Shown piece after piece: positions 6,900 to 51,625 of a DNA stretch of 64,000 bases. The first letter of the stretch is position 1. Every line of letters begins with the position of its first letter. The notes beneath the pieces are model-generated. The model saw only the letters and a program-made list of their open reading frames with translations. It did no database searches and was not told the origin of the DNA. The translations under genes and the position numbers were made by a program. This DNA is from Haliotis rufescens (Eukaryota): positions 33,604,001-33,668,000 of the forward strand of contig NW_025963780.1 of the NCBI RefSeq assembly GCF_023055435.1. The letters are read 5' to 3'.

Positions 6900-6997
6900 T
6901 TGTCAACCATACTCTGTACATCACTTGCTTGATAACGGCGTTAGAGCCAACACCGAAACATCGCTCCTAAGTGTAATAAAGAAGTTCTTCATCCATA
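6900..6997 (+). mobile_element. PLE 3'-end fragment with hammerhead motif
   Basis: TTGATAA-c-GGCGTT-agagcc-AACACC-GAAA-CATC (6929-6962) followed by the family motif AATAAAGAAGTT..ATCCATA. Confidence 0.65.
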
Positions 6998-7380
6998 TAT
7001 CCTTTCATATATCTACTATTTTATTGTTTGATTCCAACCATATTTTTAAAAGCATGTATTAGTGTGTTCATGTACATTTAATGTACTTTAACAAACCCTA
7101 TGAAACTAAAGGACCCACTCCGTGCAATGTCATACATTCGATCTGCTTTCTGGTTAAAGACAGATTAAAGCCAGACTAGTGCCGTTGTGTCCGGATTTAA
7201 AGCATACTTCCGGTTGAGAATTCATAATTACATTCATTGGGAGATGTGCCGGACTAATGCTCAAAAATACCGATACAAAATACAGTTTGAATGCCACTAA
7301 TGCAGACCTAACATATGGGGTCCTTCCATCTGAGTGCCCGCCTCACAGAACCACGTTAACAATAGCATCGCAATCATCCC

Positions 7381-7560
7381 ACAGATGGAGTCGTCTTAGG
7401 TAAAACCTACTGTGTCATTAGGCTCATGACGGGGAATTTAGATCGGACTTTGTCTTTGATTGAAGGTACATGGCATATTTCCGGTGTGCTTAATGCTTCC
7501 ATGTCGAGGAAAGCACACATGGCTCAGGCAGTGACTTGTGAAGCCTCGGACAGTCAATAA
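7381..7560 (+). pseudogene. Decayed coding-like block (TDGVVLGKTYCVIRLMTGNLDRTLSLIEGTWHISGVLNASMSRKAHMAQ); paralogues at 13489-13800 (+, SINE-interrupted), 15797-15510 (-), 1741-1560 (-)
   Basis: Open frame across copies with several third-position changes (CGA/CGG/CGC, CAC/CAT, GGG/GGT, GTT/GTG); 13-nt deletion in one copy. Confidence 0.35.
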
Positions 7561-8218
7561 CTATAATATCGAACACACGTTGACGTTAAATACCATTACT
7601 AAGAAACACCTTTCGCAAATTGGTATCTAACGAGGACGAGTGAAGTAATCTGTAGATATTTTCTCTGTCGTATTTCTATCACCTGGTTAAGTTAGAACGT
7701 GACAAGATATTACAACTGAAGGGTTAAGTGGAAATATCATCTCTACGTACAAATCACACAACTGCGTGTTGTGTTGTCTACATCGTATCAACTCTTTATA
7801 AAAAGTCGAACTCTTTTACTCGCCCGAATGCGCGGAGTCAACAAGGGTGACAAGCAATGAAATATTAAAAAACATTACAAAGTTTAAATTAAATTTACCT
7901 CGATTTCCGAAGAGATTATTGACAATTCTCTGTAAAAAATATCCAATCTCTGACTCATTAGTTTCGATGTCAAATTGCATTTCAGAAATGTTTTTGAAAG
8001 CGGAGAGACGCTGTACAACTGAAATTTGGCATGTCAATTCTTTTGAATCGTTTCCATGTTGGTTGTATAATCTTCCTCAGTTTACATTGGTAGAATATGA
8101 TTATGACAAAGGGTGTTCCGAATTAGGTAAATTACTTTTTCACTTTCTGGGGAGCAATTCATCATAATATAGATTCTAAAATGAGCATTTGATACTTGAT
8201 GCTTCAAATGATGTTTCA

Positions 8219-8321
8219 TCATCGCAATCTATTACGTTCATGAAAAAGTTTTCTTGACATTGACAGCGCATCAGTCCCGGGTTTCAGAACAAAAGAGTCG
8301 CGTCTGAGCGGATACAGTCGA
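8219..8321 (-). pseudogene. Terminal-exon-like block of an unidentified gene or TE (RLYPLRRDSFVLKPGTDALSMSRKLFHERNRLR*); paralogues at 14690 (-), 1905 (+), 9040 (+)
   Basis: Preceded by CTCCTCCCAG/CCTTCAG acceptor-like sites; several differences between copies are synonymous (CGT/CGA, CCA/CCG, GAC/GAT, GGA/GGG, CTG/TTG). Confidence 0.4.
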
Positions 8322-11719: not shown

Positions 11720-11888
11720 ACTACGGTTAAAACGAACACGCTTATAACGAACTGACGGATATAACGAACTTACTTTTCGGTCCCGATTATTTGCTGTAGT
11801 TATGTTGTATATATGCTTATAACGAACTACGGTTATAACGAACTAAAATGAGTAGTCCCTTTGATTTCGTTATAACCGTAGTTTACTG
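11720..11888. mobile_element. pogo/Tigger-type MITE (left TIR eroded)
   Basis: ACTACGGTTAAAACGAA ... TTCGTTATAACCGTAGTTTACTG|TA with internal TATAACGAA repeats. Confidence 0.7.
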
Positions 11889-13543: not shown

Positions 13544-13711
13544 GGGCGGTCGGGTAGCCTAGTGGTTAAAGCGTTCGCTCGTCACGCCGAAGACCCGGGT
13601 TCGATTCCCGACATGGGTACAATGTGTGAAGCCCATTTCTGGTGTCCCCCGCCGTGATATTGCTGGAATAATGCTAAAAGCGGCGTAAAATCAAACTCAC
13701 TCACTCACTCA
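13544..13711 (+). mobile_element. tRNA-derived SINE family A (about 165 bp, (TCAC)n tail)
   Basis: A box TAGCCTAGTGG, B box GGTTCGATTCC, 13-bp TSD CTCATGACGGGGA, empty site at about 7423. Confidence 0.92.
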
Positions 13712-19505: not shown

Positions 19506-19660
19506 NNNNNNNNNNNNNNNNNNNNNNNNNNNNNNNNNNNNNNNNNNNNNNNNNNNNNNNNNNNNNNNNNNNNNNNNNNNNNNNNNNNNNNNNNNNNNNN
19601 NNNNNNNNNNNNNNNNNNNNNNNNNNNNNNNNNNNNNNNNNNNNNNNNNNNNNNNNNNNN
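19506..19660. other. Assembly gap (155 N)
   Basis: Run of n characters. Confidence 1.
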
Positions 19661-20158: not shown

Positions 20159-22399
20159 CAGTGGTGTTTATCAAATTATTATATGCAAGTACATATTGTA
20201 GATTTGCACAAGACAAGAGACACAAAGTTAAACATACATCAAATGCCAAAAAGAATATTTACGGACAACAGTATGACACACTGTAACATCATATACTACC
20301 GAAAACAAGTTATAGAACACCAACAATTATAAGATTGTATTTTTGCAAAACAATCAGCCATGACTAATTAACCATAGTCTTCTTAACTTCTTTTGAAAAG
20401 TATATATTTAGATTTTAACCTGATTTATTTAGAGCGTATTGCCATGGTCTGCCACGCGCTTTCGGCGTGATGGTCACATACAACTGAATAGGGCTGTAAA
20501 TCAATCAATTACATTTTACGCAAAACTCTGTGGATTGTTATAAAATCACCTACGTCTGTACAGTTAAATTATGTTTTAAGTAAATAGAGAGGAAAGTTCA
20601 ACATTCCCTCCCAATGCAGCAGATGTCACATGCGGCCCCTATAGTGGTCAAGAGGGGATATATTGCTTAACCGCGAGAAAGCGAAAAAGCGAGAAAGCGA
20701 TAGAGAGAGAAAGCGAGAAAGCGGTAGAGCGATGTCCCCTCTCGGCCACCACAGGGTCCGCCTCACGTGGAATCACAACCAAGTGTCTTTTTCACAGCTA
20801 TGGTGTAAGGGAGATTACTCCTTCATAACAGTGTCACCGCCTTTATGTTTGTTATATAACATTTCCGAATTAAATATCAACCATCATCGAATCTCAATCT
20901 TGTCCAAGACATGTGTCAATCAATATTTGGGTTTTTTTTATCGAATGAAAAAACTGTTGTTTTTGTCATTGAAGGGTTGTACTTGTACTGAAAAGGAAAT
21001 ATCGAAAGAAGCGCTGTAAAATCAAATTAGAAAGCCACTTAATATTTAAGATGTGGATGTGACCAAAGACGTCAACACGTCTTTCGTGTGACTATTTTCA
21101 AAAATAAAGCTTTTGTAGTCTGTAATAATTTCACATATTGGTGGTCAGTATATAAGATGACGATAATGCGATGAATTAAATTCAGCTTGTAGCAACCCAC
21201 GGGGGGTCTGTGCGTGCGTGCGTGCGTGCGTGCGTTGTGGAGTGGGGTGGAGCGGGGGTGTCCTAGCTCATATATGACGCCTCGGGGTGTAAGAGAGATG
21301 GATGTGTCATTCTTTCTACACGTGTATTTTGTTAATCACTTGTCAACAAACGCGTGTTAAAATCAAACTGAATCGAACTGGATAGAAAAGGTTTAGAGTT
21401 ATTTCACTTCCGTTGCTGACAAATGGGGAAAGAGGGTTGTTTGACGTATATTTCAACAGGTTGAAGTCATCTAAGGCCAGACCTCATGTTAGGTTTACGG
21501 ATGTGTGGTCCCAAAATCAGATCAGTAGGTTGAAAATATAAATAAACAATATAAAATTTCAAAAAGTAAAATAACAGGGATTCAATGGCTTTTGAATGAA
21601 GTCTTTGATAGGAATTTAGAAGTTGGAAGAACATGTATACATGAAACTTTTCATGTAAAAAAAAGGTCATGTATTCATTGGGTTTTGAAGGGTTCAATAT
21701 AAATTTTCAATAGGTTTTAATTATAGTATTTTGAATAATTTATTTATATTGATAGCGCCAGTAAATGAGTTTGTGTTCTTTAATACTTTTTTTTTACTTA
21801 CTCGGCGGAATAAAAAAGCCGTTTTTCACTTTTTAAATTTGATTCACTTTCAATTCTTTTGCAAACGGCGGATTTGTAAGGACGTTTTAAAAATATATGG
21901 CGGCAGATTATTTTGGGAGAATTTTTTACAGCCATCCACACCAAAAACCTGTTCGCCATGGGATCGTTGGTGGGATGGTATCGCCAGACAACCCAAGGGC
22001 ACATCTGTAATGTAGGATAGTATCAATACACGAGTGTCCTAAAACAAGATGACACCATGTGGTCCATATATAATCATTCGTCCGTAACGTTTGTTGGCAT
22101 CAATAGAAAATTATTATTCATATTTTTACATTTCATAACTATCGATTTTGTCGCCCTCACCAGAAGTTTCTAATTCTTTTTACGGCACTTCCCTAAACTG
22201 GAAATAGGTTACGCTTCAAAATCACTTTTATATATATATATATTTATTTTTATCCTTCGGCGAATGAATTAATATCCTTTGTAAACAATGGATAAACCAT
22301 TGCTTCTATTCTTGTAGAAGATTGTTTCGTTGTTTGAGACACAGTCTTATATTCACAACGATGTATCATAATGGTTTAGAGACTGGTAAAGTCTAGACA

Positions 22400-23423: not shown

Positions 23424-23963
23424 ACTTGTTTGATAGGCATTACTTAGAAGTTTGCGGATGACAAGATAGACACAATTTTATGGATAACAACTTCTTTAAT
23501 ACTGTAAAAAGCGACGTTTCGGTATAGATCCTTATACCGTTGTCAAGCAAGACTGAATGAGGGACATAGTGCAGAATATATATAGCAAGTGGAGGATTAA
23601 CAGTAGGGGATTAACAGTAACACCAAGGGCATACATGAGTGGGATAACATAGGTAGGTGTGACAACAAGGATGATGCTATCACAACACGATGGACAGCTT
23701 CTAGCTATGTGGTTTCTGTCCATCGTGTTGTGATAGCATCATCCTTGTTGTCACACCTACCTATGTTATCCCACTCATGTATGCCCTTGGTGTTACTGTT
23801 AATCCCCTACTGTTAATCCTCTACTGTTAATCCTCCACTTGCTATATATATTCTGCACTATGTCCCTCATTCAGTCTTGCTTGACAACGGTATAAGGATC
23901 TATACCGAAACGTCGCTTTTTACAGTATTAAAGAAGTTGTTATCCATAAAATTGTGTCTATCT
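23424..23963. mobile_element. Penelope-like fold-back element with hammerhead motif (WFS1 intron 1)
   Basis: Near-perfect inverted repeat 23464-23697/23716-23963 with 18-nt spacer; 12-bp TSD AGTAGATATGTA; unpaired tail at left; TTGACAA-c-GGTATA-aggatc-TATACC-GAAA-CGTC at 23881-23914. Confidence 0.8.
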
Positions 23964-24451
23964 AGTAGATATGTAGACACAATTTATTGACAGTAGACAT
24001 GTAGACTCAATTTATTGACAGTAGACATGTAGACTCAATTTATTGACAGTAGGCATGTCGACACAATTTATGGATAGCATCTTGAATAGTAACTTAAGAC
24101 TTTTTACCTTATTTTACCTGCATTTTGAACATAACATGCCTCTCCACTCCTCTGTAACCACACCCCCATCCATTCAGCTGTGTAAACCCATCCATTCTCT
24201 GTACTTCACTTGCTGACCTGTGAAGATACGGGGTAGAATAGGTCTTCAGCAACCCATGCTTGCCGTAAAAGGCGACTAACAGGATCGGTGGTCAGGCTCG
24301 CTGACTTGCATATCATCGATCCCAATTGCGTGGATTGATGTTCATGATGTAAATCACTGGATTGTTTGGTCCAGATTCGATTATTTACAGACCGCCGTCA
24401 TATAGACATGATAGATGATACTAAGTTTAATTATTTTATTTTTCTTTCCAG

Positions 24452-24507
24452 GTGAAAAACCAAGAGAGAGGCTATAACCCAGTAGGACAAGGAACATACA
24501 AAGATGG
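24452..24507 (+). CDS. WFS1: WFS1 exon 2: 5' UTR plus start codon (ATG G at 24504-24507)
   Basis: Polypyrimidine acceptor at 24451; AAAGATGG Kozak-like context; in-frame upstream TAG at 24483; donor G|GTATGT. ATG-G joins the AC of the next exon to give M-D-P-K-P-W. Confidence 0.7.
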
Positions 24508-27500
24508 GTATGTAGTCATGGTAACGCAGTCTTCAAGTTGACCACTAGTAGTACATCACATGGTTCATAATTTCTTAATGTCACGTTCAGTGTTCACGGC
24601 ACATGTGCACAGCGTCTATCCTATCTGATACTTGTGTGAAATACTGCATGCTCTGAACTAGCTGTAGGAATCCTGGGCCCACTTGCACAAAACGATCTTA
24701 TCGCTAAGACTATTGTAAGTCTATGTTAAAGTATGGGAGTTAAGATCATCTTAGCGCTAAGATTGCTTTGAGCAAGTTGGCCCTGGATGCGAGTCCTTTC
24801 TGACGAATGTCTACAATGGGCACGCTGCGTCCTTGTAACAGATCGCGTCCAATGACTTCTTGATAACCTTGATCATTACTTGTGATCTGTGAGCTTTAGT
24901 ATTGGGTAAAGTTAGGACAACTGCTTTGGGCATATCTATTTATTACCTACGGGTTTAAGAAACAGGTGGGGAGACGAGTGTCGTACAATGTTGACCTCAT
25001 TTTATTTGTTTTGATTGGATAACTGTGACCTTGCTTAGGTCACACATGAAACATCACACTGGCACTATTTTCATTCTTAAAAACTAATGACGCCTTCAAC
25101 ATTAACAGGGGCGGTCTGAAAGCCTAGTTGTTAAAGCGTTCGCTCATCATCCCGAAAAACCGGGTTCGATTCCAGACATGGGTATAATGTGTGAAGCCCA
25201 TTTCTGGTGTCCCCCGCCGTGATTTTGTTGGAATATTGCTAAAAGCAGCGTAAAACGATACTCACTCACTCATTCACTCAACATTAACAGGTTAGATGCT
25301 GCAACATTAAAGTGACTTCTTTGAGTGGCATTTAGAAGTTGGAATGGTAACTTAGACAAAATTGTTATGGATGAGCAACTTCTTTATTACAATTGGGCAA
25401 CGTTTCGGTGTAGATCAAGCAAATGATGTACAAACTAGGTATGAGCATGATATATATACATAACAATAGATTGTTATTTCATTAACATTATTTCATTATT
25501 TCATATTTCATTATTTCATATTTCATTCAATAAACAGTGTTTTCTATTGTTATGTATATATATCATGCTCATACCTAGTTTGTACATCATTTGCTTGATA
25601 ACGGTGTTAGAATCTACACCGAAACTTCGCCCAATTGTAATAAAGAAGTTACTCATCCATAACAATTTTGTCTTAGTTAACATTAAAGTGTGCTTGACAT
25701 TTGAGTAGGACTAGTTTACATATACACATGCACAGAAGTGTCAACAATGCCCATGTTTTGGCACATATAAGTATTCATACTGAACCTGGTTTGCAACAGG
25801 TTTAGGTTTGGTCCGTTGAGTGGACATAGATTGTTATTTATTTACACATATTTAACATTGGTAATCAGAGCTTCTGATAACTTTTTGAGCAATTGAGTTT
25901 TTACTCTAGGGTTCTAATTTAATTGGGTTATTACATTTTTCATTGGGTAACCAATATTTTTTCACTCATCTATTCATAACTCTTTTGGGTTTTTCCCCAA
26001 AAGAGTGGACATTTTAAGACTTCAGAAAATGAAATAATGTTTTAGATGTATATAACCATGATAACTGTTCTAAATATATAGGCTTGACTCGGAAAGTAAA
26101 TAAGCTGATAATTGTGCTTCAGAAATTAGCTCCTTTGTACGCATTCTGAAAAATCTACATTGGGTATTTACGCGTTCTGCTTTTATACATTTGAGTTTTC
26201 CATTTAATGCATGCAATTCTGTACGCAAATTAATTGAAAGTATTTGGGTTTTGAATATTTTGGGGGGTATTTTATGCAAATACGCTGCTTGTCCATAGCT
26301 CTGGGTAACGAATAAAATACCATGCAATTCTTGTCAGATACCACTTCTATGAAACTTGTGAACTTTCTAGGTATTTAATCCAGGTTTCACTTGGTCAGAT
26401 ACCAGGGATGTCAACTCATTTCATAAAAATGGTATCTAATGAGAATGAGTGTCATATTTTACATGTATATGATACTGTAAATCTGGAAAATAATGCGTCT
26501 CCAAATTAATACGACTGCTTACCCCTAGCCAAAAATGCGACATTTCCTTAATATTTCATATTACATGTGAAGATTCTGGGGTAGAATAGGTCTTCAGCAA
26601 CCAATGCTTGCCGTAAAAGGCAAGTATGCTTGTCCTAAAAGGCGACTAACGGGATCGGGTGGTCAGGCTTGCTGACTTGGATGATGCATGTCATCAATCC
26701 CAATTGCGTGGATCGATGCTCATGACATAAATCACTGGATTGTCTGGTCCAGACTCGATGATTTACAGACTGCCGTCATATAGCTGGAATATTGCTGAGT
26801 GCGGCGTAAAACAACAAACCAACCAACCAACCAATCATATTACATACCTATCTCAGTGATGTATTATACATACATATGTGATATAATAAATAAATATGTG
26901 AAAATGCATGTAAGGATTTGACTTCAGCAACCCATGCTTGCCGTAAGAGCCGACTCTGCTTGTCGAAAGAGGTGACTAACAAGATCAGGTGGTCAGGCTC
27001 GCTGACTTGGTTCATGCATGTCATCGTATCCCAATTGTGCAGATACATCAATATGTAATTGTTTCTTTTTGATGTACTCTCTACACATCTGTGTGCAATA
27101 TGGAGGTAGTCAACATATCCAGCCAAAATCAGTCATCCATGTCAACCCATGGTCGCTATACCTTAGCCAATATTCCCATCGATCACATCATTCCATCTGT
27201 CCGTAAATGTTCAGTAGTTGGTTCCATGAACTCATTCTTGCATGTTAAGTTGGAAGTCCCATTAATCACTCAATGGACTACTGGTAATTAATACCATCAC
27301 TCCCTGGTCAACTGTTGGTACCATCCATCCACAGTCATTCATCCCATCCATCCATCACTCAGTGGTCAACTGCTAATCCCTTCCATCACTCTGAGGTCAA
27401 CTGCTAATCCCTTCCATCACTCAGTGGTCAACAGCTAATTCCATCCATCACTCTGAGGTCAACTGCTAATCCCTTCCATCAACCAGTGGTCAATTGCTAG

Positions 27501-33500: not shown

Positions 33501-36500
33501 AGATCTAGGGTAGAATAGGCCTTCTGCAACCCATGCTTGACGTAAAAGGCAACTTTGCTTGTCTTAAGAGGCAACTAACAGGATCAGGTGGTCAGGCTCG
33601 CTGCCTAGGTGGATGCATGTCATTGCATCCCATTTGCGTAGATGGATGCTCATGATCACTGGATTGTCTGGTCCACACTTGATTATTTACTACTGCCGTC
33701 ATATGGCTGAAATATTGATGAGTGCAGCGTTAAACAACAAACAAACAGTTGCTTCAGAGGCTCCTTACCTGTGATCAATCATCAAAGTCTACTTATATAT
33801 TTGGGGTGGTCAGGTAGCCTAGTGGTTAAAGCATTCGCTCTTCACGCCGAAGACCCGGGTTCGATTCCCGACATGGGTACAATGTGTGAAGCCAAATTTT
33901 CAGGTGTCCCCTGTCGTGATATTGGTGGAATATTGCCAAAAGCAGCGTAAAACCATACTCACTCACTCACTCACTCACTACTTATATATTTAATATAAGA
34001 TGATACTATTTTGGTAATTGGCACATCTGCCAATTAATATAATGCAAAGTGAAAAATAAATAATCTCAGAAAATAATATTCTCCCCAACAAAATGTGTTG
34101 ACCTGCTTGACCCCTAGTAATACAATATCTGCAAGACAAAAATGTCCAGCATAAAAAACACAGCACACGCGGCATCATAGAAAACCTTTCCAAATCTTCA
34201 TTGTCTACTTTCGTTTCATTTTCTTCCCATCTATCCACCAGGATCATTCGCAGGGTAATCTGTGAACAAAGAAATAACAGAAGTCTGGCCTTCATTGCAT
34301 CAACATTCTGTAATCAAAATACTTGGTTTGACAAAAAACATTATGAAATGAATAATTATCACAATATAAGCCCAAATAATTTTAATCCTGATAAAGCCAG
34401 TGACATTATGCTGTGAATCTTGCATAACGATGTTCCCAAATGTCATTAACCCATTATTTATTAATTCTGCATTCTACTTGGTTGTAGTCCAGTTATTTAT
34501 TTTGTTGGAAAAGATATATAATTATATGTGCAAATGATTTTAGTTCCAACTTACTGTAATATTTGGAGCATGGTACATTATCTGAGTCGGGGAATTTTAT
34601 CAGCAGATGTTGAAGAACCTGATCTCAACTCTCTCTCTACTGATCATTAAGCAGACTTTTTATCATACCAAACTCACACATTCTGATTGGACGTAAGTTA
34701 AAGACGAAGTATAAAATCTATAGGGTTAATTGAAGGTTAAAATATTTTTTTACAATGTAACTCTTTAGTTTCAGTTAATTCCTCTTTACTGCCAAGCAGA
34801 ATAAAACAGCTTAAGCATAAAATGATTATTTGTTTGTGTAGAATTACTTGACAGTGCTTATTACGGAGGTGTGAGTCATGCCATCATCTGACTCTGATTA
34901 ACATTACAGAGTCAACTGATGAAGCATCAAAGTTGGCTGAATCAAAACCAGAGCAGGTACTGGTACCAGAACCCGCACCCACACCAGAGCCAACACCAGC
35001 ACCGGTGCAAGCACCGAAACCAGAACCTGTGGTGGCGCCTGTGGTAGCGCCTGTGTCAGCACCTGTGCCCAAGCCTGTACCAGAACCTAAGCCGAAACCT
35101 GAACAAGAGCCGAAGCCAAAGCCGAAACCTGTGCCAGAATCTAAGCCGAAGTCAGTGCCAGAGCCGAAACCCAAATCTGTGCCAGAACTTAAGCCAAAGT
35201 CTGTGCCGGAACCAAAGTTTAAGCCTGTATCAGAACCGAAGCCGAAGTCGGTGCCGGAGCCCAAGCCAAAGCCTGCCGTGAAGACTGTGGCAGATCCTGT
35301 GCCACAGGCTGTGCACAAACCTGTGCCACAAGCAGAGAAGGAGGAGCCCCCAGTCAGTGAGTCTGTGTTCCTGTATATATCCAAGCTCGTTGTAAATATG
35401 TAGCGGCCATAAAATTTCAGAGTCCCGTGATGGGATTCGAACCACGGACCTTCTGAGCACAGGTCGGACGCCTTGTCCACATTACCAAAGAGGTTAACCC
35501 TGTCAGCAAGCTGAAAAGGTAAGGATGTCATCTGTGGGATGACTCCACGTCCTGCTACAAATAAACCATGCTTATCAGGCCAGTCTTCTGTCCTTGAGGA
35601 CATGTGCAGGTGGGCGCTGTGGACATTATAGATCTGAAGTACTTGTCCTTGTGTACACGTCAGATATCTTTTACATAGCTGTGATATATGATTGTGATAT
35701 TGCTGTGATATTGCTGTGATACATCTGTGATACATCTGTGACATAGCTGTGGACCCATGAAGATCCGGGGTAGAATAGGTCTTCAGCAACCCATGCTTGC
35801 CGTGAAAGGCGACTATGGCTGTCATACATCTGTGAGTGTGATATGTACCTGTGATATGGCTGTGTGATACATCTATGACACATAGTTGTGAGATATGGCC
35901 AGTGTCCGAAATAACTGCCTGTAAAGCTTGTAACTTTTCTGTCAGGCAGCATGAAATTTTCCTCCACCTGCCCGACTGTTTTAAGAAAACTTATGTATTC
36001 ATCGTAGATTCTCAAGTAATTGTTTGCAATATTTCAATTGAATTAAGACATGATTTGTCTCTTAGTTCTTGTGCTTTTTCAATATTTATAATGCCTGAAT
36101 GCAGGCAGGTAACTTTGAAGATGGGCAGGCAACACTTTTGGGTCACCTGCCCGACTGTCTTGTTGAGTTTTTAAATTATTTCGGACTCTGGATATGGCTG
36201 TGGTACCACTGATAGTCAGTGATGGCTGGGGTACATCACACAATATGTCCTGCCTCCTCACATGATGTCCCTACTCCGCAGATCCGGAGGTGATTCGGTC
36301 TTGGGAGTCTGACGCTAACAAGGGCTCCGAGGAGCATCAGCTGAAGCTGGGAAAACACTTCCTGTCTCTGGCCGACTCGGATATAGAGAGGGACCGCAAT
36401 GCAGGCCTGGCTCTTGATTGGCTGCTTCGAGCCTCCAAACAGGGTAGTGAGGAGGCAACAGAACTGCTGCAGAGTTGTGTCAACAGGAGTCTGCCTGGTA

Positions 36501-42500: not shown

Positions 42501-45030
42501 TGGTCATTTTAACCTCATCTTAGTGTCATATATGGTCGTTTTAACCTCATCTTAGTGTCATATATGGTTGTTTGAACCTCAGCTTAGTGTTGTCACAATG
42601 TTGTTTACATGTTAGTATTCATGTTTTACCCTCTTCATGGCCAATTATTTATCTATGAGTCGGGGGGCACTGGGTGGCCCAGTCGTCTAAGGCGCCACGA
42701 TTCACTGTGCAGAGTTGCGTCCCTTGGGCACGTCAGAAACCTATGATTGTGGGTTTGAATCCCGGTTCGCCCCAATTATGTTTCTAGGTTTGTCAGCACC
42801 ATACCCTTGCTCGTGGATTTCACCGAAGTGGTAAACGTCCGAGACCTGCATCACTTCGGGCTTTCCTCCCACATTAAGCTGACAAGCTGCAATATAACTG
42901 TAATACTGTTAAAAGCGGCGTTAAACCCAACTCACTAACTCACACTCATCTATGAGTGTGTAGTGTAAAGTCATTAAATCATGTGTTAATAGGTATCAAT
43001 GACTGTTGCAAAGAAACTTTGTTTCTTTTTACATATTCTTTACTGTTGTTTCTTATAACCTTATTTATATGGTATTATGTTGAAAATAGTCCAGAAAATA
43101 TTCAGGTGAGCTACAGAGCATATTTTGATGAGAGCAAAAACAAATCAAGGAATTCCGAAAACAGGGTTGAATCAGAAAATGCCAAAGTGTATATTATTTC
43201 AGGTGGAAAATTAAAAGGTTAATTTATGACATAGAAAAGGAGCATCTGATGAGATGATCATTGTTTATGTTGCAGATTTACCGCTACCCCCGACAGACCT
43301 TTTCTTCCGTGATGGACCAGGCATTGGAATACTCCTCCCAGGAGGGGCTGAACTGGGTTGTGTCCCTCATCCCCACCAATCAGCTGTACGTCCTCGGCCT
43401 GCTCTTTGTCTACAGCTTCATCACTCCTGACTTCATGTTTTTCTTCATCCCGCTCTTCATCTTCTACCTCTCCTTCGCTGCCATCATCGTCTGCACCTTG
43501 CAGATGTTCTACAAGAAGAAGAAGCAGAACGATGCTGCAACTCTGGCTGGTGTTCTCAAAGAACTCGACGTGACCATCGATCTCGACAAAACGGAGTCTC
43601 AGTTCACCTGGAACTCACTCACTCCTTACATCGTCTTCTTTTGCAACCTGCCGCTCGTTATCGCGAGTTTCTCGCTTTGCAACAAATCCTACGTTCCTTG
43701 TGCCGAGATTACAGTCATTTCCTTCGTCATGACCGGATTATGTTTCTTCAGCCTCAGCGACCACCATGACAAGCTGACCTTCTTCGCGCTGTTCGCCAAC
43801 CTGCTGTCCTCACTCCCCGTGTTTCTACACAACTTCCCATCAGTGCCGTTACTTAAACAGATTATCGGGTTCCTCACAGATCCATTCATCGCTTTGGACA
43901 CTGGTGTGGGTATTACCTTTAATGTCAGTATTCCTTCAGTAGCATATGCAATAATCCCCTTGTTCTTTGTTCGAATGGCCACTCGGAAGTCGTGGGAAGG
44001 AACATACCGAGTCCTAATCCCCCATCTTGTCTGTTATTTCTGGTTTAACATCCTGACCTCGACCTTCCCTTTCACCTCCTGGGTGGGGCTAGCTCGGGCC
44101 ACCATTGGCTACATGCTTCTCCCTGTGCTAGTCCCACTCAGCCTCGTCGGAGTTGCTGTGATGTTCATCTTCGCCGTCTACAAAGCCTTCCAGACAGAGA
44201 TGCTTGGGAAGATGGTTGTGACTGTTGTCCTTCTTGCTATACCGATTCTCATGACCCAGACCAAGAAAATCTTCGGAAAAAAATTTGATGCTAAGTTTGG
44301 AATTGCCAAAAAGGTCGTCATGGTTGTTTTCGCCATTCTAGCTTTGGTGCCACTGATTTTTGTCAGAATTCCTGCATGGAAGAAAGAGGTTCCTGTTGAA
44401 CTGTCGTACGAAAATTACACTTCTTTATGTTTCCGAGAAAAAGTGGTAAATGATGTCCCGCAGCAAATTACTTGCAGCCATCTCATTGGTACAAAAATTA
44501 CATGGACTGGAACGGTTGAAGGTGTGACCGTTGTAAAAATTGAGAATACAGCCGAAAGCGTCATTGGCACTCTTCCCTCTTTCGTAGCGAAGCCTTTATA
44601 TTGCATGTATGGGCAGCCATTCCCGCAGTGTGACCGGAAACTGCTCAGTAAGAAGGGTTACAGTTTTTGCGTTATCATGCGTGGACTCGGACATTCATGC
44701 CATGTTAAGAACCACAATGTGTACACTTTCGAAATTCTCATGCTTACTGGGGATCAGAACATCAAAATAGAAGCTGGCGATAATTTCAAGGAAACGGTTC
44801 TTGCTCTGGAGATCGGGGACGTGGTGCAGTATAGAGGGGCACTGACAGATAACCTCGGAGGAACTGTCCCCAAATTAAAACTGTCTTCTTTGAAAGCAAC
44901 CAATCGCACGCTGCCAATCATGATGCATGTTGACGAGGATGACGACAAGTACATGTCCGCTGTTCAGGAAGCAATTGCCGTTACTTTCAACTTCCTCTGG
45001 TTTCCGCTGCTGGAGTTTTCTACCAAGTAA
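24504..45030 (+). CDS. WFS1: Wolframin (WFS1 orthologue), spliced model join(24504-24507,28248-28937,34910-35356,36282-36497,37641-37841,38970-39109,43276-45030), about 1150 aa
   Basis: All introns are GT-AG with compatible phases (1,1,1,1,1,0); total 3453 nt = 1151 codons. The peptide follows the wolframin layout: Sel1-like N-domain (GKHFLSLA...DWLLRASKQG), EF-like region, multi-TM region, luminal domain, C-terminal FNFLWFPLL. Large last exon as in vertebrate WFS1. Confidence 0.9.
24676..24783. mobile_element. Short palindromic MITE (Harbinger-like); second copy at about 46681-46804
   Basis: GGCCCACTTGCACAAAACGATCTTA ... TAAGATTGCTTTGAGCAAGTTGGCC flanked by CWG. Confidence 0.65.
25108..25278 (+). 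mobile_element. SINE family A
   Basis: Family match; TSD TCAACATTAACAGG. Confidence 0.88.
25315..25678. mobile_element. Penelope-like fold-back element with hammerhead motif (WFS1 intron 2)
   Basis: Inverted arms about 25348-25470/25543-25679; 12-bp TSD AACATTAAAGTG; TTGATAA-c-GGTGT...ACACC-GAAA at 25595-25624. Confidence 0.78.
27350..28105. repeat. 31-bp minisatellite (WFS1 intron 2)
   Basis: CTGAGGTCAACTGCTAATCCCTTCCATCACT, about 24 copies. Confidence 0.95.
28248..28937 (+). CDS. WFS1: WFS1 exon 3: S/T/P/E-rich low-complexity exon with six (R/K)WG repeats
   Basis: Acceptor CTTCCTTCCCTCAG|AC; 690-nt open frame (includes ORF 28463-28942); donor A|GTTAGT; phase 1 at both ends. Confidence 0.75.
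29738..30285. repeat. 53-bp G/T-rich minisatellite (WFS1 intron 3)
   Basis: GGTGGATTTAGGTGGATAGTTTTGTGCTTGGGGGTCAGGTGGATTGTTTCATG, about 10 copies. Confidence 0.93.
30286..31900. repeat. 24/22-bp G-rich minisatellite (WFS1 intron 3)
   Basis: GGCCTGGATGGTGAGGGTCAGGTG and a 22-bp variant; 214-bp higher-order duplication. Confidence 0.95.
33803..33978 (+). mobile_element. SINE family A
   Basis: Family match; TSD CTACTTATATATTT. Confidence 0.88.
34910..35356 (+). CDS. WFS1: WFS1 exon 4: PEPK/PKSV-repeat proline-rich exon
   Basis: Acceptor ATTACAG|AG; open frame (ORF 34933-35403); donor A|GTGAGT; phase 1/1 joins to exon 5. Confidence 0.8.
35900..36190. mobile_element. hAT-type MITE
   Basis: TIR CAGTGTCCGAAATAA/TTATTTCGGACTCTG; 8-bp TSD GATATGGC. 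Confidence 0.82.
36282..36497 (+). CDS. WFS1: WFS1 exon 5 (Sel1-like repeat region)
   Basis: PEVIRSWESDANKGSEEHQLKLGKHFLSLADSDIERDRNAGLALDWLLRASKQGSEEATELLQSCVNRSLP; CCGCAG| acceptor, G|GTAAG donor. Confidence 0.93.
37329..37597 (+). mobile_element. Short retroposon family B (about 250 bp, no tRNA head, (AAAC/AACC)n tail); representative copy
   Basis: Other copies at about 2648-2873+, 6105-6345-, 10755-11003-, 11331-11569+, 24216-24405+, 26565-26835+, 26921-27045+, 33492-33747+, 35752-35816+, 56440-56683-, 59462-59622-, 59882-60105+, 63437-63699+. Confidence 0.88.
37641..37841 (+). CDS. WFS1: WFS1 exon 6
   Basis: GINEKDANDITWCLKTSSYEKKIRYAARSLFQRINTTHKEALSKDEYMDAIKGVTGKVKEQRLLMAA; CTGCAG| acceptor, G|GTAGG donor. 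Confidence 0.92.
37915..38870. repeat. 37-bp minisatellite (WFS1 intron 6)
   Basis: CTTGGCCTACATCAGCTGAAACTCCAGTATTTATATT, about 25 copies. Confidence 0.95.
38970..39109 (+). CDS. WFS1: WFS1 exon 7
   Basis: GRKIGKEISENEFVKMLSKKIQGTVTLTTEELADTNVSYESAGYVTK; CACAG| acceptor, AAG|GTAAG donor; 140 nt converts phase 1 to phase 0. Confidence 0.9.
39268..39944. mobile_element. Tc1/mariner-pogo-type non-autonomous DNA transposon
   Basis: TA|CAGTCAAGTCCCGTTAATCCGACA ... TGTCGGATTAATGAGACTTAACTG|TA. Confidence 0.8.
40255..40688 (-). mobile_element. 5'-truncated LINE (I/Nimb-group-like ORF2 C-terminus plus 3' UTR)
   Basis: 12-bp TSD CACATCGAGTCT; minus-strand frame ...LANVLNPLNDLKTFKTLDIYLIKTGLLGRI* (stop 40545-40547); (TAAG)n tail. 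Confidence 0.75.
41301..41471. mobile_element. pogo/Tigger-type MITE
   Basis: TA|CAGTCAAACCTCATTGTG ... CACAATGAGGTTTGACTG|TA. Confidence 0.82.
43276..45030 (+). CDS. WFS1: WFS1 terminal exon (transmembrane and ER-luminal domains)
   Basis: Part of the 589-aa ORF 43261-45030 downstream of acceptor TTGCAG|. IYRYP...GLNWVVSLIPTNQ, multiple hydrophobic segments, W-x-G-x-Y-R-x-L-I-P-H-L, Cys-containing luminal part, TAA stop followed by AATAAA at about 45038 and 45055. Confidence 0.95.
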   Translation: MYRYPRQTFSSVMDQALEYSSQEGLNWVVSLIPTNQLYVLGLLFVYSFITPDFMFFFIPLFIFYLSFAAIIVCTLQMFYKKKKQNDAATLAGVLKELDVTIDLDKTESQFTWNSLTPYIVFFCNLPLVIASFSLCNKSYVPCAEITVISFVMTGLCFFSLSDHHDKLTFFALFANLLSSLPVFLHNFPSVPLLKQIIGFLTDPFIALDTGVGITFNVSIPSVAYAIIPLFFVRMATRKSWEGTYRVLIPHLVCYFWFNILTSTFPFTSWVGLARATIGYMLLPVLVPLSLVGVAVMFIFAVYKAFQTEMLGKMVVTVVLLAIPILMTQTKKIFGKKFDAKFGIAKKVVMVVFAILALVPLIFVRIPAWKKEVPVELSYENYTSLCFREKVVNDVPQQITCSHLIGTKITWTGTVEGVTVVKIENTAESVIGTLPSFVAKPLYCMYGQPFPQCDRKLLSKKGYSFCVIMRGLGHSCHVKNHNVYTFEILMLTGDQNIKIEAGDNFKETVLALEIGDVVQYRGALTDNLGGTVPKLKLSSLKATNRTLPIMMHVDEDDDKYMSAVQEAIAVTFNFLWFPLLEFSTK

Positions 45031-46622: not shown

Positions 46623-47368
46623 CCAGTGATGTATTCCATGCTAATGCCTCAAGAGTCTGCCAGTATGTGACTGGAATCCAGGGCCCACATGCACAAAACG
46701 ATCTTAGCACAAAACGATCTTAGCACTACAGCTATCATAAACCTATGTAAAAGTGTGGGAGTTGCGATCATCTTTGTGCTAAGATCGTTTGTGCAAGTGG
46801 GCCTGACCAAATTGACTCCTAATTTGATAGTTCTAAATCAAAACAAGAGGCAAACAGCTTGTTTGATTTTATTTTCATATCCCCCTCAAAATATGACATA
46901 TTTGCACATTTTCATAAAAACACTACATTATCACTTTTTTCTTCTTGTTCTGTATATGCAAATTGAATTCTAAATTTTGAAAACCCAAGAAATTGCTCTG
47001 TCGTAAAGAAAAGATGAAAAATATTGAAGACTCTCTATGCTGTAGTGTTCTACATGTTCAATAAAACACCCTACTGTAGTGTTAGAAGCGAGGAAATCAG
47101 TTAATATATTTTGTGTTGTGTGACTATTCCAAACATTCGGCGATCGATGTGAAAGCTCAAATCTTTTCTCACCGGACACAATGGTGTTTAATAGTAATCA
47201 AAACTTGGTGATTATGTTGTAAAGTCTTTTACTATTGTTCTGGTTCTGTGTTAAGAAGTTTTGATATTTTGTTACAGGTGGATGTGGAAAATACTTTCAG
47301 TTACTGGAATGCCATTAGAATGTTATGAATTGTTCATTGTTATGGAATTTTAACACTATTTACTAGCA

Positions 47369-48408
47369 AGTCTTTGAATGGCATTTAGAAGTGATACACA
47401 TAAGAGAGAGAGAATTTATGGATGTCAACTTCTTTATTATGAGGAACACAACATTTCGGAGTACATACTTACTCCTTCATCAGGTGAATGAAGGAGTAAG
47501 CATACACTGATTTACCTGATGGAGGAGTATGCATACACTGATTAACCTGATGAAGGAGTAGGCATACACTGATTTACCTGATGAAGGAGTAAGCATACAC
47601 TGTTTTACCTGATGAAGGAGTAGGCATACACTGATTTACCTGATGAAGGAGTAGGCATACACTGATTTACCTGATGAAGGAGTAGGCATACACTGATTTA
47701 CCTGATGAAGGAGTAGCATACACTGATTTACCTGATGAAGGAGTAGGCATACACTGATTTACCTGATGAAGGAGTAGGCATACACTGATTTACTTGATGA
47801 AGGAGTAGGCATATACTGATTTACCTGATGGAAGGAGTAGGCATACACTGATTTACCTGATGGAAGGAGTAGGCATACACTGTTTTACCTGATGAAGGAG
47901 TAGGCATACACTGATTTACCTGATGAAGGAGTAGGCATACACTGATTTACTTGATGAAGGAGTAGATATATATACTGTTTTACCTGATGAAGGAGTAGGC
48001 ATACACTGATTAACCTGATGAAGGAGTAGGCATACACTGATTTACTTGATGAAGGAGTAGATATATATACTGTTTTACCTGATGAAGGAGTAGTTATACA
48101 CTGTTTTACCTGATGAAGCAGTAGGCATACACTGATTTACTTGATGAAGAAGTAGACATACACTGTTTTACCTAATGAAGGAGTAGGCATACACTGATTT
48201 ACCTGATGAAGGAGTGAGCATAAATTGATTTACCTGATGAAGGAGTAGGCATACATTGATTTACCTGATGAAGGAGTAGGTAACACTGTTTTACCTGATG
48301 AAGGAGTAGGCATACACTGATTTACCTGATGAAGGAGTAAGTATATACTCTGAAACATTGTGTTCCTCATAATACAGATTTTGACATCCATAGATCCTCC
48401 TCTCTCCT
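47369..48408. mobile_element. Penelope-like fold-back element with internal 31-bp hammerhead-derived minisatellite
   Basis: 14-bp TSD ACTATTTACTAGCA; inverted arms about 47404-47486/48324-48406; CTGATGA-a-GGAGTA...TACTCT-GAAA at 48326-48355; about 27 units of CCTGATGAAGGAGTAGGCATACACTGATTTA between the arms. Confidence 0.8.
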
Positions 48409-51400
48409 ACTATTTACTAGCATGCTGTTAATATGCTGTGATGCATTAGTGTATATTATGTTCTGATCTGTAATTGATTTGTAAACAAATATTAATATAT
48501 TGTCAAAGACACATAGCAATATTTTCCTGTACAGTTGGTAAATTTGTGCTTTTGTTTATTTATTGTAATTTAAATATGATGAGAAGATATTTCTTAATAT
48601 CAAAGATTTAGAATACAAATCAAATATGCATTTACCTTGCGCAGGTATATCTGATCTCTTTTGATGTCTGACATTAGTTAATTGTCACTAAATTCTGTGT
48701 GCCCCTCTGTGATATTTTTGTTCTATTACATGTCTGTGTATTTAATATATCATTTTTATAGTTATTATTTAATATTTCAGATTATCAGTTATTTGTCTTT
48801 TGGGATTGTGTCCTTTTATACATCTATTGCTCAGGTTGAACCACCTGCAGACAGCAGGGTTGTGTTAATTTCCATATTATCTGATGAGAACAATTCCTTG
48901 TTGCTATTGGATCTTGGTCAGAACAAGACGGTACATGAAAAAAAGTAGAAAAAGTTGAATGAAAGCTTTTAAAATAACAGATCAAACAAGAACTTTGTCA
49001 TAATATTTTCAGTATATTACCGTAGACAAGAAAACATCTATTAAGTACAACCATTGTACAAAAATTGTACTACGAGCCTATGACAATAAATCATAGCAGT
49101 TCTATGGAGAAAGTTTTTTGTGTGAGTGAAATCTAAATAAAATTTCTGTCCACCCCTACAAGAAGCAGGTTCAGGCTGATAATCAGAGTAATATGGGTAT
49201 AAATACACCCTGTGTGTCGAGGATGGTAGTTATGCTGCTTGTCATGATATTATATATTGATTTGATTTGACTGTTTAAAGTGTGCCAGTACATTTTACCT
49301 TGTTTCTTGAATGCCTTGGAGAAGAACTTCTTGAGCTCCTTGTTATGAGATTATGAAATAGCATTACTTTATGAAAACAGTGTATATGAGTGTTGATGTT
49401 CTACTTAACTTTTCAACATTATTTTTTATTGTCACATTAACAAATGATCAAATGACTGACAATGTGAAAAGAGTTACCAAAGTACAAAAGAAATATCGAA
49501 TGGCACATTTCAAACAAGACTCCGAAGATGTATCAGTATCTATTTTGATAATTACAGATAACCTGTATCTCTAAACAATTTGATTAAATACAAACATTGT
49601 CAATCAATAGGCAATTCTTTCCAAAACGATGTAAATAATTTGATTTTTTATGTATATATACTACTCAAAAACAGTTAGGGATAACCCGATTCTTTCCTAT
49701 TACTATAGTTTATTGTTTATGTAACTAGTTATAGGAATTGGGTGATCCACTGTTTGATTAGTGTAGAAAAATATGAAATCAAAATGTATTCTTGTTTCTA
49801 ATTGAATTTTGAATGTAAGTTCCGTGTAAGTTTTGTCACTCGCTGTGCAGAGTTGCGTCCCTTGGGCATGTCAGAATTCTATGATTGTGGGTTTGAATCC
49901 CGGTTCGCCCTGATTATGTTTCTAGGTTTCTCAGCACCATACCCGTGCTCGTGGGTTTCACCGAAGTGGTAAATGTCTGAGACCTGTATCACTTTGGGCT
50001 TTCTTCCAACGCTAAGCTGACACGCCGCAATATAACTGGAATACTGTTAAATGCGGCGTTAAACTCAACTCACTCACTCACTCACTCACTCACTCACTCA
50101 CTCACTCACTCTGTCACATAATTTCACTATGGCTTGAAGCATAGCTGTATTGCTTATTGGCAGCAGTACTTCTGTAATAAATACTTACATGTGAATGGAG
50201 GGTGCTACTGGCAGGACATGCTTACCCTTTTTGCAAACACCTGGTGTCATCACTGATTTTCAGTGGTCCATTCTTATATTTTTACAGCTATTTTGGCCTT
50301 TATGCCAAATGGAATCTGTTTTAGAAGAAAATCAAAACTTGTTATTCTCTTGTATTCATGTTTTATATTATGTTACATGTATGACAGTATCAACTATACA
50401 ATGTGCTGATGGTTGTATACAGCCACAGTGCTACAAGTCTAAGTCTGTACGTGTACTTGAGGCCATGACAAATTGATTATTTGTTCACAGGGTTTTCTGG
50501 TTAAAGTACAAGAGCTTGGAGTCGGTTTTATTATTTGGTTGAAATGACAAACTGTTCCTGAAAATAGAGACAGAATGTCAATATCCCTCTGAGCTGTGAG
50601 GGGGGCTCGGGTGGCCCAGTCGTCTAAGGCGCTGTGATTCGCTGTGCAGAGTTTCCTCCCTTGGACACACCAGAAACCTATGATTGTGGGTTCGAATCCC
50701 GGTTCGCTCCAGTTATGTTTTTAGGTGTGTCAGCACCATACCTGTGCGCGTTGGTTTCACTGAAGTGGTAAATGTCTAAAACCTGCATCAATTTTCCTCC
50801 CACATTAAGCTGACATGCCATGATTTAACTGGAATACTGTTAAAAGCGTTGAACTCACTCACTCGCTCACTCACTGAGCTGTGGTACATACTTCGTATGC
50901 TTTCACTTAGGTAGTCGTAATGTGTATGTAGAGTTGCCATCTCTGATCAGAAGGTTGTGGGTGAGCTGAAATGGGGTTTAACATTGTTTTCAAGAATATT
51001 GCACTTACATAACGTGTAAGCTGTGTGTGTGTGTGTGTGTCTGCTTGTACTTGTCCGGACTAATGTCAGTTTTATAGTGCTATCCCACTGAGATACCATG
51101 CTGCATTTTAACATGGCTACCCCACTCAGACACAGTATACAGACTCCGAGCCGACCATTCCTTGTTTTAGCCCCATAAAGCTGAGCACCAGGTAGGGTAA
51201 TAACAGGTACCACCTGAGGATTGAACCACAAACCTTCCCAGTGTAGGGGAAACCCTTTTTTCATATAATCCCTGGGAAATGATTAGAAGTATGACGGCTA
51301 CTACTGCAACTGTCATTTTATTAGCACTTTTTAACTTGACCATTGATTGTTGCTTGGGATTTAATTAAGTTTTCATGACACTAGCTGTGATTGTGTTTTG

Positions 51401-51544
51401 TAATACACTAAAACCTTATGACCCACATCCCAAATTAACAGACACATTGTATTTTATTTAATTGATTCTGATGAACAAGTTATCAGTTAGTCATGGCCTG
51501 AGTCACATTTCTTTCACTAAATTTGATATAAAGTCTTTTATAGG

Positions 51545-51625
51545 CATTCACCTGATGAAGGAGCAACAAGTAGCTCTGAAACATAATGGCAGACAAAGAA
51601 TAAAAGAAGTTGCTATCCATAAAAA
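51545..51625 (+). mobile_element. PLE 3'-end fragment with hammerhead motif
   Basis: CTGATGA-a-GGAGC-aacaagta-GCTCT-GAAAC (51552-51582) followed by AATAAAAGAAGTTGCTATCCATAAA. Confidence 0.65.

What the first reader, a model, noticed from the sequence alone, without database searches (positions are those of the whole stretch)
6929..51582. Family of five minimal hammerhead-ribozyme motifs with C3-G8 / U3-A8 covariation at Penelope-like element ends
Seen: five loci share the layout core5'-(1 extra nt)-hairpin-GAAA-C(G/A/T)TH followed by A(A/T)TAAA(A)GAAGTT..ATCCATA. The cores are TTGATAA (6929), TTGACAA (23881), TTGATAA (25595), CTGATGA (48326) and CTGATGA (51552). Stem II sequences differ but remain mostly paired (GGTATA/TATACC, GGTGT/ACACC, GGAGTA/TACTCY, GGAGC/GCTCT). 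Positions 3 and 8 change together (C-G versus U-A). Established: the hammerhead core CUGANGA/GAAA needs a 3-8 Watson-Crick pair, and Penelope-like retroelements carry minimal type I hammerheads with tiny palindromic stem III thought to work as dimers. Inference: several PLE subfamilies here kept catalytic hammerheads, including a U3-A8 class that standard CUGANGA searches would miss. The 23881 copy (GAAACGTC, palindromic ACGU, GUC site) looks intact.
Basis: partly seen in the sequence, partly recalled or inferred. Interest (0 to 1): 0.8.

Follow-up and report, generated by a model that had tools for sequence, protein, structure and literature searches.

The report
Penelope retroelement stubs carrying hammerhead motifs
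The five sites are broken-off 3' ends of Penelope-like retrotransposons in an abalone genome, each with the small hammerhead ribozyme motif typical of these elements; the U3-A8 core variant is real but was already described in 2014, so this is ordinary.

Summary

They are 5'-truncated 3' ends of Penelope-like elements (PLEs) in a 1.33-Gb genome that a protein name identifies as Haliotis rufescens. The 23881 type has at least 40 copies identical over 111 nt. It lies about 120 nt past the stop of a 723-aa reverse-transcriptase ORF with a GIY-YIG-like C-terminus. The 6929/25595 types follow ORFs that are 56-59% identical to it.

Between these families the 3' UTR cannot be aligned except for a roughly 90-nt island holding the motif. 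Variation falls where a hammerhead allows it: N7, loop II, H17 and compensated stem pairs.

In this genome the C3-G8 to U3-A8 swap is one event between two clades. In 80 PLE loci from metagenome contigs, motifs 3' of the ORF read CG 25, UA 10, AU 1 and non-Watson-Crick 0. The RT tree needs at least 4 switches.

The reading is therefore supported, but Cervera & de la Peña 2014 (PMC4209133) already reported PLE minimal hammerheads. That paper includes the U3-A8 variant, the extra nucleotide before stem II, the palindromic helix III and inverted pairs.

Catalysis is untested, and helix I is only 2 bp in the U3-A8 families. This scan already holds 32 notes with these words on the same genome.

The parts
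6665..7004 (+). 5'-truncated 3' end of a PLE (family B). The motif core to H17 is 6929-6962, with U3-A8. It is decayed: one C.A mismatch in stem II and ACAU instead of ACGU.
6579..6661 (-). Short inverted family-B piece abutting the 6665-7004 copy head to head. It carries no hammerhead.
21593..21651 (-). Extremely 5'-truncated PLE stub holding only the last ~55 nt with the tail motif CCAACTTCTAAAT.CCTATCAAAG. It carries no hammerhead.
23425..23620 (-). Left arm of the family-A inverted twin, in the long 3' form with tail. The intact U3-A8 motif is at 23513-23546 on the minus strand.
23810..23966 (+). Right arm of the family-A twin, in the short 3' form. The motif is at 23881-23914 (TTGACAA c GGTATA/TATACC GAAACGTC). 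The predicted cleavage site is between 23914 and 23915.
25312..25416 (-). Left arm of the family-B2 twin. The 5' half of the motif is deleted and GAAACGTT is retained.
25553..25662 (+). Right arm of the family-B2 twin. The motif is at 25595-25628, with U3-A8. Helix III is decayed to ACUU.
47368..47489 (-). Left arm of the family-D twin. The C3-G8 motif is at 47450-47483 on the minus strand (GGAGTA/TACTCC, GAAATGTT).
47488..48339 (+). 31-nt tandem array (27 copies) whose unit is the 5' half of the family-D motif (CTGATGA a GGAGTA..) without GAAA. It lies between the two arms of the family-D twin.
48320..48392 (+). Right arm of the family-D twin. The motif is at 48326-48359, with C3-G8. It has G.U at 10.1-11.1 and ACAU.
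51541..51639 (+). Family-C copy truncated about 10 nt 5' of the core. The motif is at 51552-51585, with C3-G8 and GGAGC/GCTCT. Helix III is decayed (ACAU, H17 = A).

Best explanation
What is shown. The five loci and their twins are dead-on-arrival, 5'-truncated 3' ends of several Penelope-like retrotransposon families of an abalone genome. Most were inserted as head-to-head inverted pairs. Each carries the minimal type-I hammerhead motif that PLEs encode near their 3' end / pseudo-LTR. The motif reads: core N3-UGA-N7-N8-A, one unpaired nucleotide, a 5-6 bp helix II, GAA, and a helix III reduced to the palindrome A-CG-U. Homology, the ORF link, the PLE insertion anatomy, compensatory changes in helix II and in the first pairs of helix I, and a Watson-Crick 3-8 pair that is U-A in one clade and C-G in the other are all shown here.

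What is inferred from published work on other PLEs (PMC4209133, PMC6765202, PMC11167929). In a transcript of an active tandem element, two motifs pair through the ACGU palindrome. This builds a shared helix III, and the RNA cuts itself 3' of H17, slowly and probably helped by the element's own protein.

Consequence for the window copies. They have no such partner in sense orientation. The twin arms would instead fold into a long hairpin. The window copies are therefore relics and not working ribozymes of the host wolframin locus.
For: Copy number and truncation.
- Family A has at least 40 copies 100% identical over 111 nt, and 1574 first-look candidates.
- Similarity between family-A copies decays upstream, as with 5' truncation.

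ORF.
- A 723-aa open frame carries Pfam RVT_1 at 1e-11.
- It matches an Anolis protein over its full length (36% identity, 97% coverage).
- A profile of the family hits telomerase RT at 2e-4 and the T4 EndoII GIY-YIG nuclease at 0.033 over the C-terminal domain.

Families B and B2.
- They carry the U3-A8 motif 3' of ORFs only 56-59% identical to family A.
- Their UTRs align only in the motif island.

Pair counts on 64 distinct copies.
- 3-8 pair: UA 40, CG 22, other 2.
- Three helix II pairs and helix I pair 2 show changes on both sides.
- 78% of cells are paired, against 17-54% with slid partners.

The 3' ends of family-A copies cluster at two places about 40 nt apart. This matches the PLE tail (PMC11167929, PMC8557442).

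Metagenome PLEs. Motifs 3' of the ORF read CG 25, UA 10, AU 1 and non-Watson-Crick 0. The RT tree needs at least 4 forced switches.
Against: - No Rfam hammerhead model matches, even at E<=10.
- Helix I is only 2 bp (GC/GC) in families A and B.
- Family C has G.U at 10.1-11.1.
- No RNA evidence exists. Three small-RNA runs gave 0-2 reads and the contig run is probably DNA.
- Every inserted copy keeps 50-95 nt beyond the cleavage site, so the reverse-transcribed template was not cut there.
- PMC11167929 found ribozyme mutants insert normally in vitro and found no reads ending at the site.
- PMC8557442 notes that PLE clades without hammerheads proliferate well.
- The GIY-YIG domain is not found by Pfam.
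Confidence: 0.85

Rival explanations
1. The motif descends from a hammerhead but is kept in the abalone U3-A8 families for a job other than self-cleavage. One candidate is a folded handle for the element's RT/EN near the sites where reverse transcription starts.
For: - The conserved island runs beyond the motif into AATAAAGAAGTTG..ATCCATA and a hairpin that brackets the two 3'-end classes.
- Helix I is 2 bp in families A and B.
- Templates were uncut at the site.
- PMC11167929 reports that cleavage is dispensable for insertion in vitro.
- PMC4209133 itself leaves non-cleavage roles open.
Against: - Every catalytic position (U4 G5 A6 A9 G12 A13 A14 A15.1 U16.1 H17) is kept. Variation sits at N7, the loops and compensated pairs.
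- The 3-8 position is Watson-Crick in 36 of 36 PLE motifs sampled. This pattern is specific to the active hammerhead fold.
Confidence: 0.12
2. U3 and A8 are two unrelated neutral transitions in a decaying relic, and the resemblance to covariation is coincidence.
For: - Inside this genome the swap is only one event between two clades.
- C to U and G to A are the commonest substitutions.
- Dead copies do show single changes: TG, CA and AA, and three TTGATGA units in the array.
Against: - The U-A state is the commonest form of at least three families whose ORFs are 56-59% identical and whose UTRs are otherwise unalignable.
- One of these families is young, with an open frame.
- The same swap recurs at least 4 times in other PLE lineages with no non-Watson-Crick state.
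Confidence: 0.02
3. The palindromic pairs are fold-back or MITE-type DNA transposons with long terminal inverted repeats, and are not retroelement stubs.
For: Near-perfect inverted repeats lie at 23464-23950, 25362-25662 and 47368-48392.
Against: - Each arm is the 3' end of an element with an RT ORF.
- Arm lengths differ from copy to copy through variable 5' truncation.
- Single unpaired copies are common.
- One arm has the tail and the other lacks it.
- This arrangement is the one described for PLEs (PMC8557442, PMC4209133).
Confidence: 0.01

Closest known systems
Minimal hammerheads of metazoan Penelope-like elements (Cervera & de la Peña 2014, PMC4209133)
   Same: Type-I layout with helix III reduced to a palindrome. 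One unpaired nucleotide between A9 and 10.1. A long helix II full of compensatory changes. G10.1-C11.1. Location in the pLTR / 3' of the RT-EN ORF. Thousands of dispersed single copies, and pairs 100-700 bp apart on opposite strands.
   Different: The host is an abalone. Helix I is 2 bp in families A and B, against 4-5 bp in the published consensus. Family C has G.U at 10.1-11.1.
U3-A8 core variant of the Cercyon PLE of Schistosoma mansoni (PMC4209133, fig. 2A inset; about 1,300 hits)
   Same: The same isosteric swap of the C3-G8 Watson-Crick pair, in a PLE minimal hammerhead.
   Different: A different PLE lineage and host. Here the variant is the state of a whole clade of families, one of them with at least 40 identical copies.
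Drosophila virilis Penelope hammerhead (PMC4209133)
   Same: A 2-bp helix I, a 6-bp helix II with the bulged 5' base, and highly uniform copies in a genome under recent invasion.
   Different: D. virilis has a bulge inside helix II, a 2-nt insertion in helix III and a C3-G8 core.
PAc (Poseidon of Anolis carolinensis) protein-assisted hammerhead and internal RT initiation (PMC11167929)
   Same: The ORF is homologous over its full length. Two 3'-end classes about 40 nt apart match the two RT start sites and the tail.
   Different: In PAc the motif overlaps the ORF start and has C3-G8. Activity was shown there and is not shown here.
Animal non-LTR retrozymes (bioRxiv 10.64898/2026.07.22.740005; PMC5680766)
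   Same: Hammerhead-bearing non-autonomous relatives of PLE pLTRs. Family C looks non-autonomous, and one locus outside the window (L067) has head-to-tail 49-nt hammerhead units.
   Different: The window copies are dispersed or inverted and are not head-to-tail repeats. The window's 31-nt array lacks the GAAA half.

Membership tests
PLE minimal hammerhead (min-HHR, PMC4209133) | Core boxes N3-U-G-A-N-N8-A and G-A-A-A with a Watson-Crick 3-8 pair | tested here: met
   All five loci. In 64 distinct copies the pair is UA 40, CG 22, other 2, and U4 G5 A6 A9 G12 A13 A14 A15.1 are at least 90% conserved.
PLE minimal hammerhead (min-HHR, PMC4209133) | One unpaired nucleotide between A9 and 10.1 | tested here: met
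   It is C in families A and B, A in C, D and one B2 copy, and U in a few copies.
PLE minimal hammerhead (min-HHR, PMC4209133) | Helix II of 5-8 bp with G10.1-C11.1 and compensatory changes | tested here: met
   Helix II has 86.7% of cells paired. All six of its pairs show a change on both sides in some copies, and three of them differ between families. G10.1-C11.1 holds in A, B, B2 and one D copy. Family C's commonest form has G.U.
PLE minimal hammerhead (min-HHR, PMC4209133) | Palindromic 15.1-16.1 / 15.2-16.2 (dimer helix III) | tested here: met
   ACGU is the commonest form of families A, B and C. In the window only 23881 and 23546(-) keep it. The others read ACAU, ACUU or AUGU, as CpG decay would give.
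PLE minimal hammerhead (min-HHR, PMC4209133) | Helix I of about 4-5 bp | tested here: inconclusive
   Helix I is 4 bp in family C (GUGA/UCAC) and 3 bp in D, but only 2 bp (GC/GC) in A and B. A 2-bp helix I is reported for the D. virilis variant.
PLE minimal hammerhead (min-HHR, PMC4209133) | Lies in the pLTR / 3' UTR of an RT-EN element | tested here: met
   Shown for families A, B and B2. For C and D only the shared 3' module and tail were seen.
PLE minimal hammerhead (min-HHR, PMC4209133) | Self-cleavage 3' of H17 as a dimer | not testable with these tools
   The raw small-RNA runs gave 0-2 reads and the contig run cannot show ends.
Rfam hammerhead models (type I/III, HH9, HH10, II) | Match to a covariance model | tested here: not met
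   There is no hammerhead hit at gathering score on the window. There is none at E<=10 on 23700-25800 or 48200-51700. The models expect a closed helix III.
Endonuclease-positive Penelope-like element | Reverse transcriptase of the PLE/telomerase-like kind | tested here: met
   RVT_1 at 1e-11. The profile hits telomerase RT at 2e-4. There are 1242 relatives in animals, including Anolis.
Endonuclease-positive Penelope-like element | C-terminal GIY-YIG endonuclease | tested here: inconclusive
   The motif VVYKVDCNCGQSYAGET..R..EH..E..N is read in the translation. Pfam gives no hit. The profile gives T4 EndoII (2wsh) at E 0.033 over profile positions 662-751. One relative is named a GIY-YIG endonuclease by its source.
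Endonuclease-positive Penelope-like element | Insertion anatomy: heavy 5' truncation, inverted 5'-truncated twin, optional 30-40 bp tail | tested here: met
   3' ends lie at +123..131 (17 copies) and +162..171 (11 copies).
Non-LTR retrozyme | Head-to-tail tandem repeats, each with a complete hammerhead | tested here: not met
   The window copies are single or inverted, and the 31-nt array unit lacks GAAA. A 49-nt complete-motif array exists elsewhere, in L067.

The most novel reading that the evidence does not exclude
A PLE family that spread recently in abalone (at least 40 identical copies, with an open RT frame) uses a U3-A8 hammerhead with only a 2-bp helix I. This hammerhead would be active only with help from the element's protein. 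The 3-8 pair would have flipped between C-G and U-A, and once to A-U, at least four separate times in PLE history, possibly as a way to tune cleavage rate. That would give a natural series for testing what the 3-8 pair contributes to catalysis.
Probability: 0.3. Interest if true: 0.4.

Novelty: new member of a known kind. Interest (0 to 1): 0.17.

Why it matters
It matters little beyond annotation. These sites should be masked as PLE fragments around a wolframin gene and not read as host ribozymes.

Two modest points of value remain. First, the abalone genome holds a very young U3-A8 family, which is convenient material for testing whether such cores cleave. Second, the sample of 36 PLE motifs suggests that the 3-8 swap is frequent and recurrent among PLEs and is not a one-off of Schistosoma.

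Tried and rejected
- Rfam scans at gathering score and at E<=10 found no hammerhead. The tRNA-like, snoRNA-like and miRNA-like weak hits are chance matches or SINE heads.
- Minimum-energy folding and cofolding recover only the helix II hairpin and pair the core bases with each other, so they say nothing about the ribozyme fold.
- RNA reads. No run is on record as RNA apart from three size-selected small-RNA libraries with 0-2 reads. The depth profile of the contig run only shows that the last ~90 nt of the element is far more abundant than the upstream part.
- A search for ORF-bearing copies of families C and D failed.
I used one metagenome scan instead.
- The GIY-YIG domain was sought by Pfam and by single-sequence PDB search, with no hit.
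- The CTGATGAAGG at 38736(-) is a variant unit of an unrelated 37-nt array and is not a hammerhead.
- A 36-nt satellite in L042 matched my relaxed descriptor (A3/C8, not Watson-Crick) and was discarded.

Full report
**1. The observation**

The cores are TTGATAA (6929), TTGACAA (23881), TTGATAA (25595), CTGATGA (48326) and CTGATGA (51552). Each core is followed by:
- one extra nucleotide;
- an 18-nt stem-loop;
- GAAA, then C-N-T-H;
- about 25 nt later, a block A(A/T)TAAA(A)GAAGTT..ATCCATA, which has diverged at 48326.

A pattern scan finds YTGAYRANGG 29 times against 4.7 expected. Most of the excess is a 31-nt tandem array at 47488-48339 whose unit is the 5' half of the motif.

- an intact twin at 23513-23546(-);
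- a partly deleted twin at 25312-25416(-);
- a twin at 47450-47483(-);
- an inverted stub at 6579-6661(-);
- a tail-only stub at 21593-21651(-).

Four of the five loci are therefore head-to-head inverted pairs.

The assembly gap at 19506-19660 lies more than 1.9 kb from any of these pieces and none spans it. It does not bear on the finding and was left as it is.

**2. What the copies are**

The window is C2:33604001-33668000 of a 1.33-Gb assembly. The best protein match is named Haliotis rufescens, on a contig of the same length as C223.

Family A (the 23881 type):
- It has at least 40 copies 100% identical over 111 nt, and 1574 first-look candidates.
- Aligned on the motif, similarity between copies falls away upstream at different points. 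This is the signature of 5' truncation.
- Downstream, the copies end in two clusters, 48-56 nt and 87-96 nt past the predicted cleavage site. This is the optional 30-40 bp 'tail' of Penelope-like elements. PMC11167929 traces the tail to two internal start sites of reverse transcription.
- Longer copies run into an open frame of 723 codons ending about 120 nt before the motif.

The family-A ORF:
- It has Pfam RVT_1 at 1e-11.
- It has 1242 relatives in animals, including an 836-aa Anolis protein at 36% identity over 97% of its length.
- A profile of 26 relatives hits telomerase RT at 2e-4. It weakly hits the GIY-YIG nuclease T4 EndoII (E 0.033) over the C-terminal domain.
- In the translation that domain reads VVYKVDCNCGQSYAGET..R..EH. 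Pfam does not see it, so the endonuclease assignment stays weak.

Other families:
- The 6929 type (B) and the 25595 type (B2) sit behind ORFs only 56-59% identical to family A.
- Families C (51552) and D (48326) were found only as short copies.
- Families A, B and C share the 3' module and the tail CCAACTTCTAAATGCCTATCAAAG. I take this as mobilisation by the same kind of machinery; it is an inference.

Inverted 5'-truncated twins, tails at one end only, and pairs 100-700 bp apart on opposite strands are the published anatomy of PLE insertions (PMC8557442, PMC4209133).

**3. Is the motif under constraint as a hammerhead?**

Between families A, B and B2 the 3' UTR cannot be aligned, except for an island of about 90 nt. 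The island starts at CTTGC-TTGAYAA and ends at ATCCATA; the tail is also conserved.

The 64 distinct copies align without gaps. Within the motif:
- The catalytic positions are at least 90% conserved.
- Differences fall at N7, the extra nucleotide, loop II, H17 (C or U) and paired positions.

Counting a structure that I named:
- the 3-8 pair is UA 40, CG 22, other 2;
- helix II pairs switch UA/AU (38/22), GC/AU (43/20) and UA/CG (43/19);
- the second pair of helix I switches GC/AU (39/21);
- 78% of cells are paired, against 17-54% when partners are slid.

These counts are copies and not events. At family level there are about five compensated double changes among four or five lineages, and the 3-8 swap is a single event separating (A, B, B2) from (C, D).

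Weak points:
- Helix I is only GC/GC in families A and B.
- Family C has G.U at 10.1-11.1 in nearly all copies. This looks like the state of its source element and not independent CpG decay. By contrast, the ACGU palindrome shows both CpA and TpG decay products.

**4. Independent events**

To test covariation beyond one event I fetched 80 PLE loci from metagenome contigs with the protein profile. I scanned them with a descriptor that leaves positions 3 and 8 free.
- On the sense strand 3' of the ORFs the motifs read CG 25, UA 10 and AU 1 (L124).
- The only two non-Watson-Crick hits lie inside ORFs.
- By eye from the listing, each of the eight U-A motifs downstream of an ORF, and the A-U one (L124), has a palindromic helix III. 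Each also has 2-5 bp of helix I.

On a tree of the RT cores, the state needs 9 changes by parsimony. At least 4 are forced by well-supported branches, with sister pairs such as L108 (UA) / L106 (CG).

So the 3-8 pair covaries repeatedly in PLEs.

**5. Comparison with what is known**

Cervera & de la Peña 2014 (PMC4209133) describe exactly this object: minimal type-I hammerheads in PLE pLTRs. Their description includes:
- a long helix II;
- an unpaired base before it;
- G10.1-C11.1;
- palindromic 15.2-16.2;
- huge numbers of dispersed single copies;
- pairs on opposite strands;

They also report a 2-bp helix I in D. virilis and very low activity in vitro, even as dimers. Later work cited in PMC6765202 showed dimeric cleavage. 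PMC11167929 showed a protein-assisted PLE hammerhead that is dispensable for insertion in vitro.

The finding is therefore a correct rediscovery in a new host. This scan already holds 32 notes with these words on the same genome, one of them followed up with the same conclusion.

**6. How it most likely works**

Shown: the homology, the ORF link, the insertion anatomy and the pattern of constraint.

Inferred from the literature: in tandem active elements two motifs pair through ACGU and cut 3' of H17, slowly and with protein help.

In the window the copies are relics:
- Four of the five have lost the palindrome or a stem pair.
- The intact pair at 23513-23546(-) and 23881-23914(+) would fold as a long hairpin of roughly 240 bp in any read-through transcript, not as a ribozyme dimer.

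All inserted copies retain 50-95 nt beyond the cleavage site. The reverse-transcribed template was therefore uncut there, which keeps a non-cleavage role as a live rival.

**7. Limits**

- No RNA evidence could be obtained.
- Rfam models do not detect these motifs.
- I built no full-length consensus of any element and single out no copy for revival.

Noticed in passing
window 47488-48339: A 31-nt tandem array (27 copies) made of the 5' half of the family-D hammerhead. It sits between the two inverted arms at 47368-47489(-) and 48320-48392(+). The unit lacks GAAA, so it cannot be a ribozyme. Three units read TTGATGA (U3-G8).
   Followed up: partly
L067 (G000:C605:331092-331818): Head-to-tail array of 49-nt units. 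Each is a complete family-C minimal hammerhead with helix I closed (GUGA/UCAC plus a 7-nt loop). The array ends in a normal PLE 3' module with tail. The units are far shorter than described retrozymes. The array could come from rolling-circle copying of a tiny circle or from slippage.
   Followed up: partly
L124:1576-1625 (metagenome contig JAAIGE0101127485.1): A PLE minimal hammerhead with an A3-U8 core (ATGAATA). It has the palindrome ACUAGU and a 4-bp helix I. This is a third Watson-Crick state of the 3-8 pair.
   Followed up: partly
window 23915-23966; 6963-7004; 25629-25662; 51586-51639: The conserved module 3' of the motif holds a poly(A)-signal-like hexamer (AATAAA, ATTAAA in family A, AATACA at 48326). 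In long copies it also holds a predicted hairpin AGAAGTTG...CAACTTCT. The short 3' ends fall inside its loop and the long ends fall about 40 nt further on.
   Followed up: partly
window 23365-23423 and 23964-24071: The family-A twin sits in a 28-bp satellite. The satellite unit contains the reverse complement of part of the element's 3' end (AAATTGTGTCTA). In L042 another copy abuts a 36-nt satellite. This suggests either a target preference or satellites seeded by the insertion process.
   Followed up: no
window 28116-28793 and 43261-45030 (+): The host gene is wolframin. The 589-codon open frame at 43261-45030 has the Pfam WC-rich (8e-25) and WCOB (1.5e-15) domains. The PLE stubs at 6929, 23881 and 25595 lie upstream of both frames, and those at 48326 and 51552 lie downstream, all outside the frames.
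   Followed up: partly
window 13548-13619 and 33808-33879 (+): Two similar tRNA-like sequences just above the Rfam tRNA threshold (30-33 bits), with mismatched stems. They are probably heads of a tRNA-derived SINE.
   Followed up: no
window 12607-61677: The window is unusually rich in minisatellite arrays: 47-, 31-, 53-, 24-, 37-, 41-, 36-, 29- and 22-nt units. One is a 41-nt unit repeated 63 times at 51993-54574, directly 3' of the 51552 stub.
   Followed up: no
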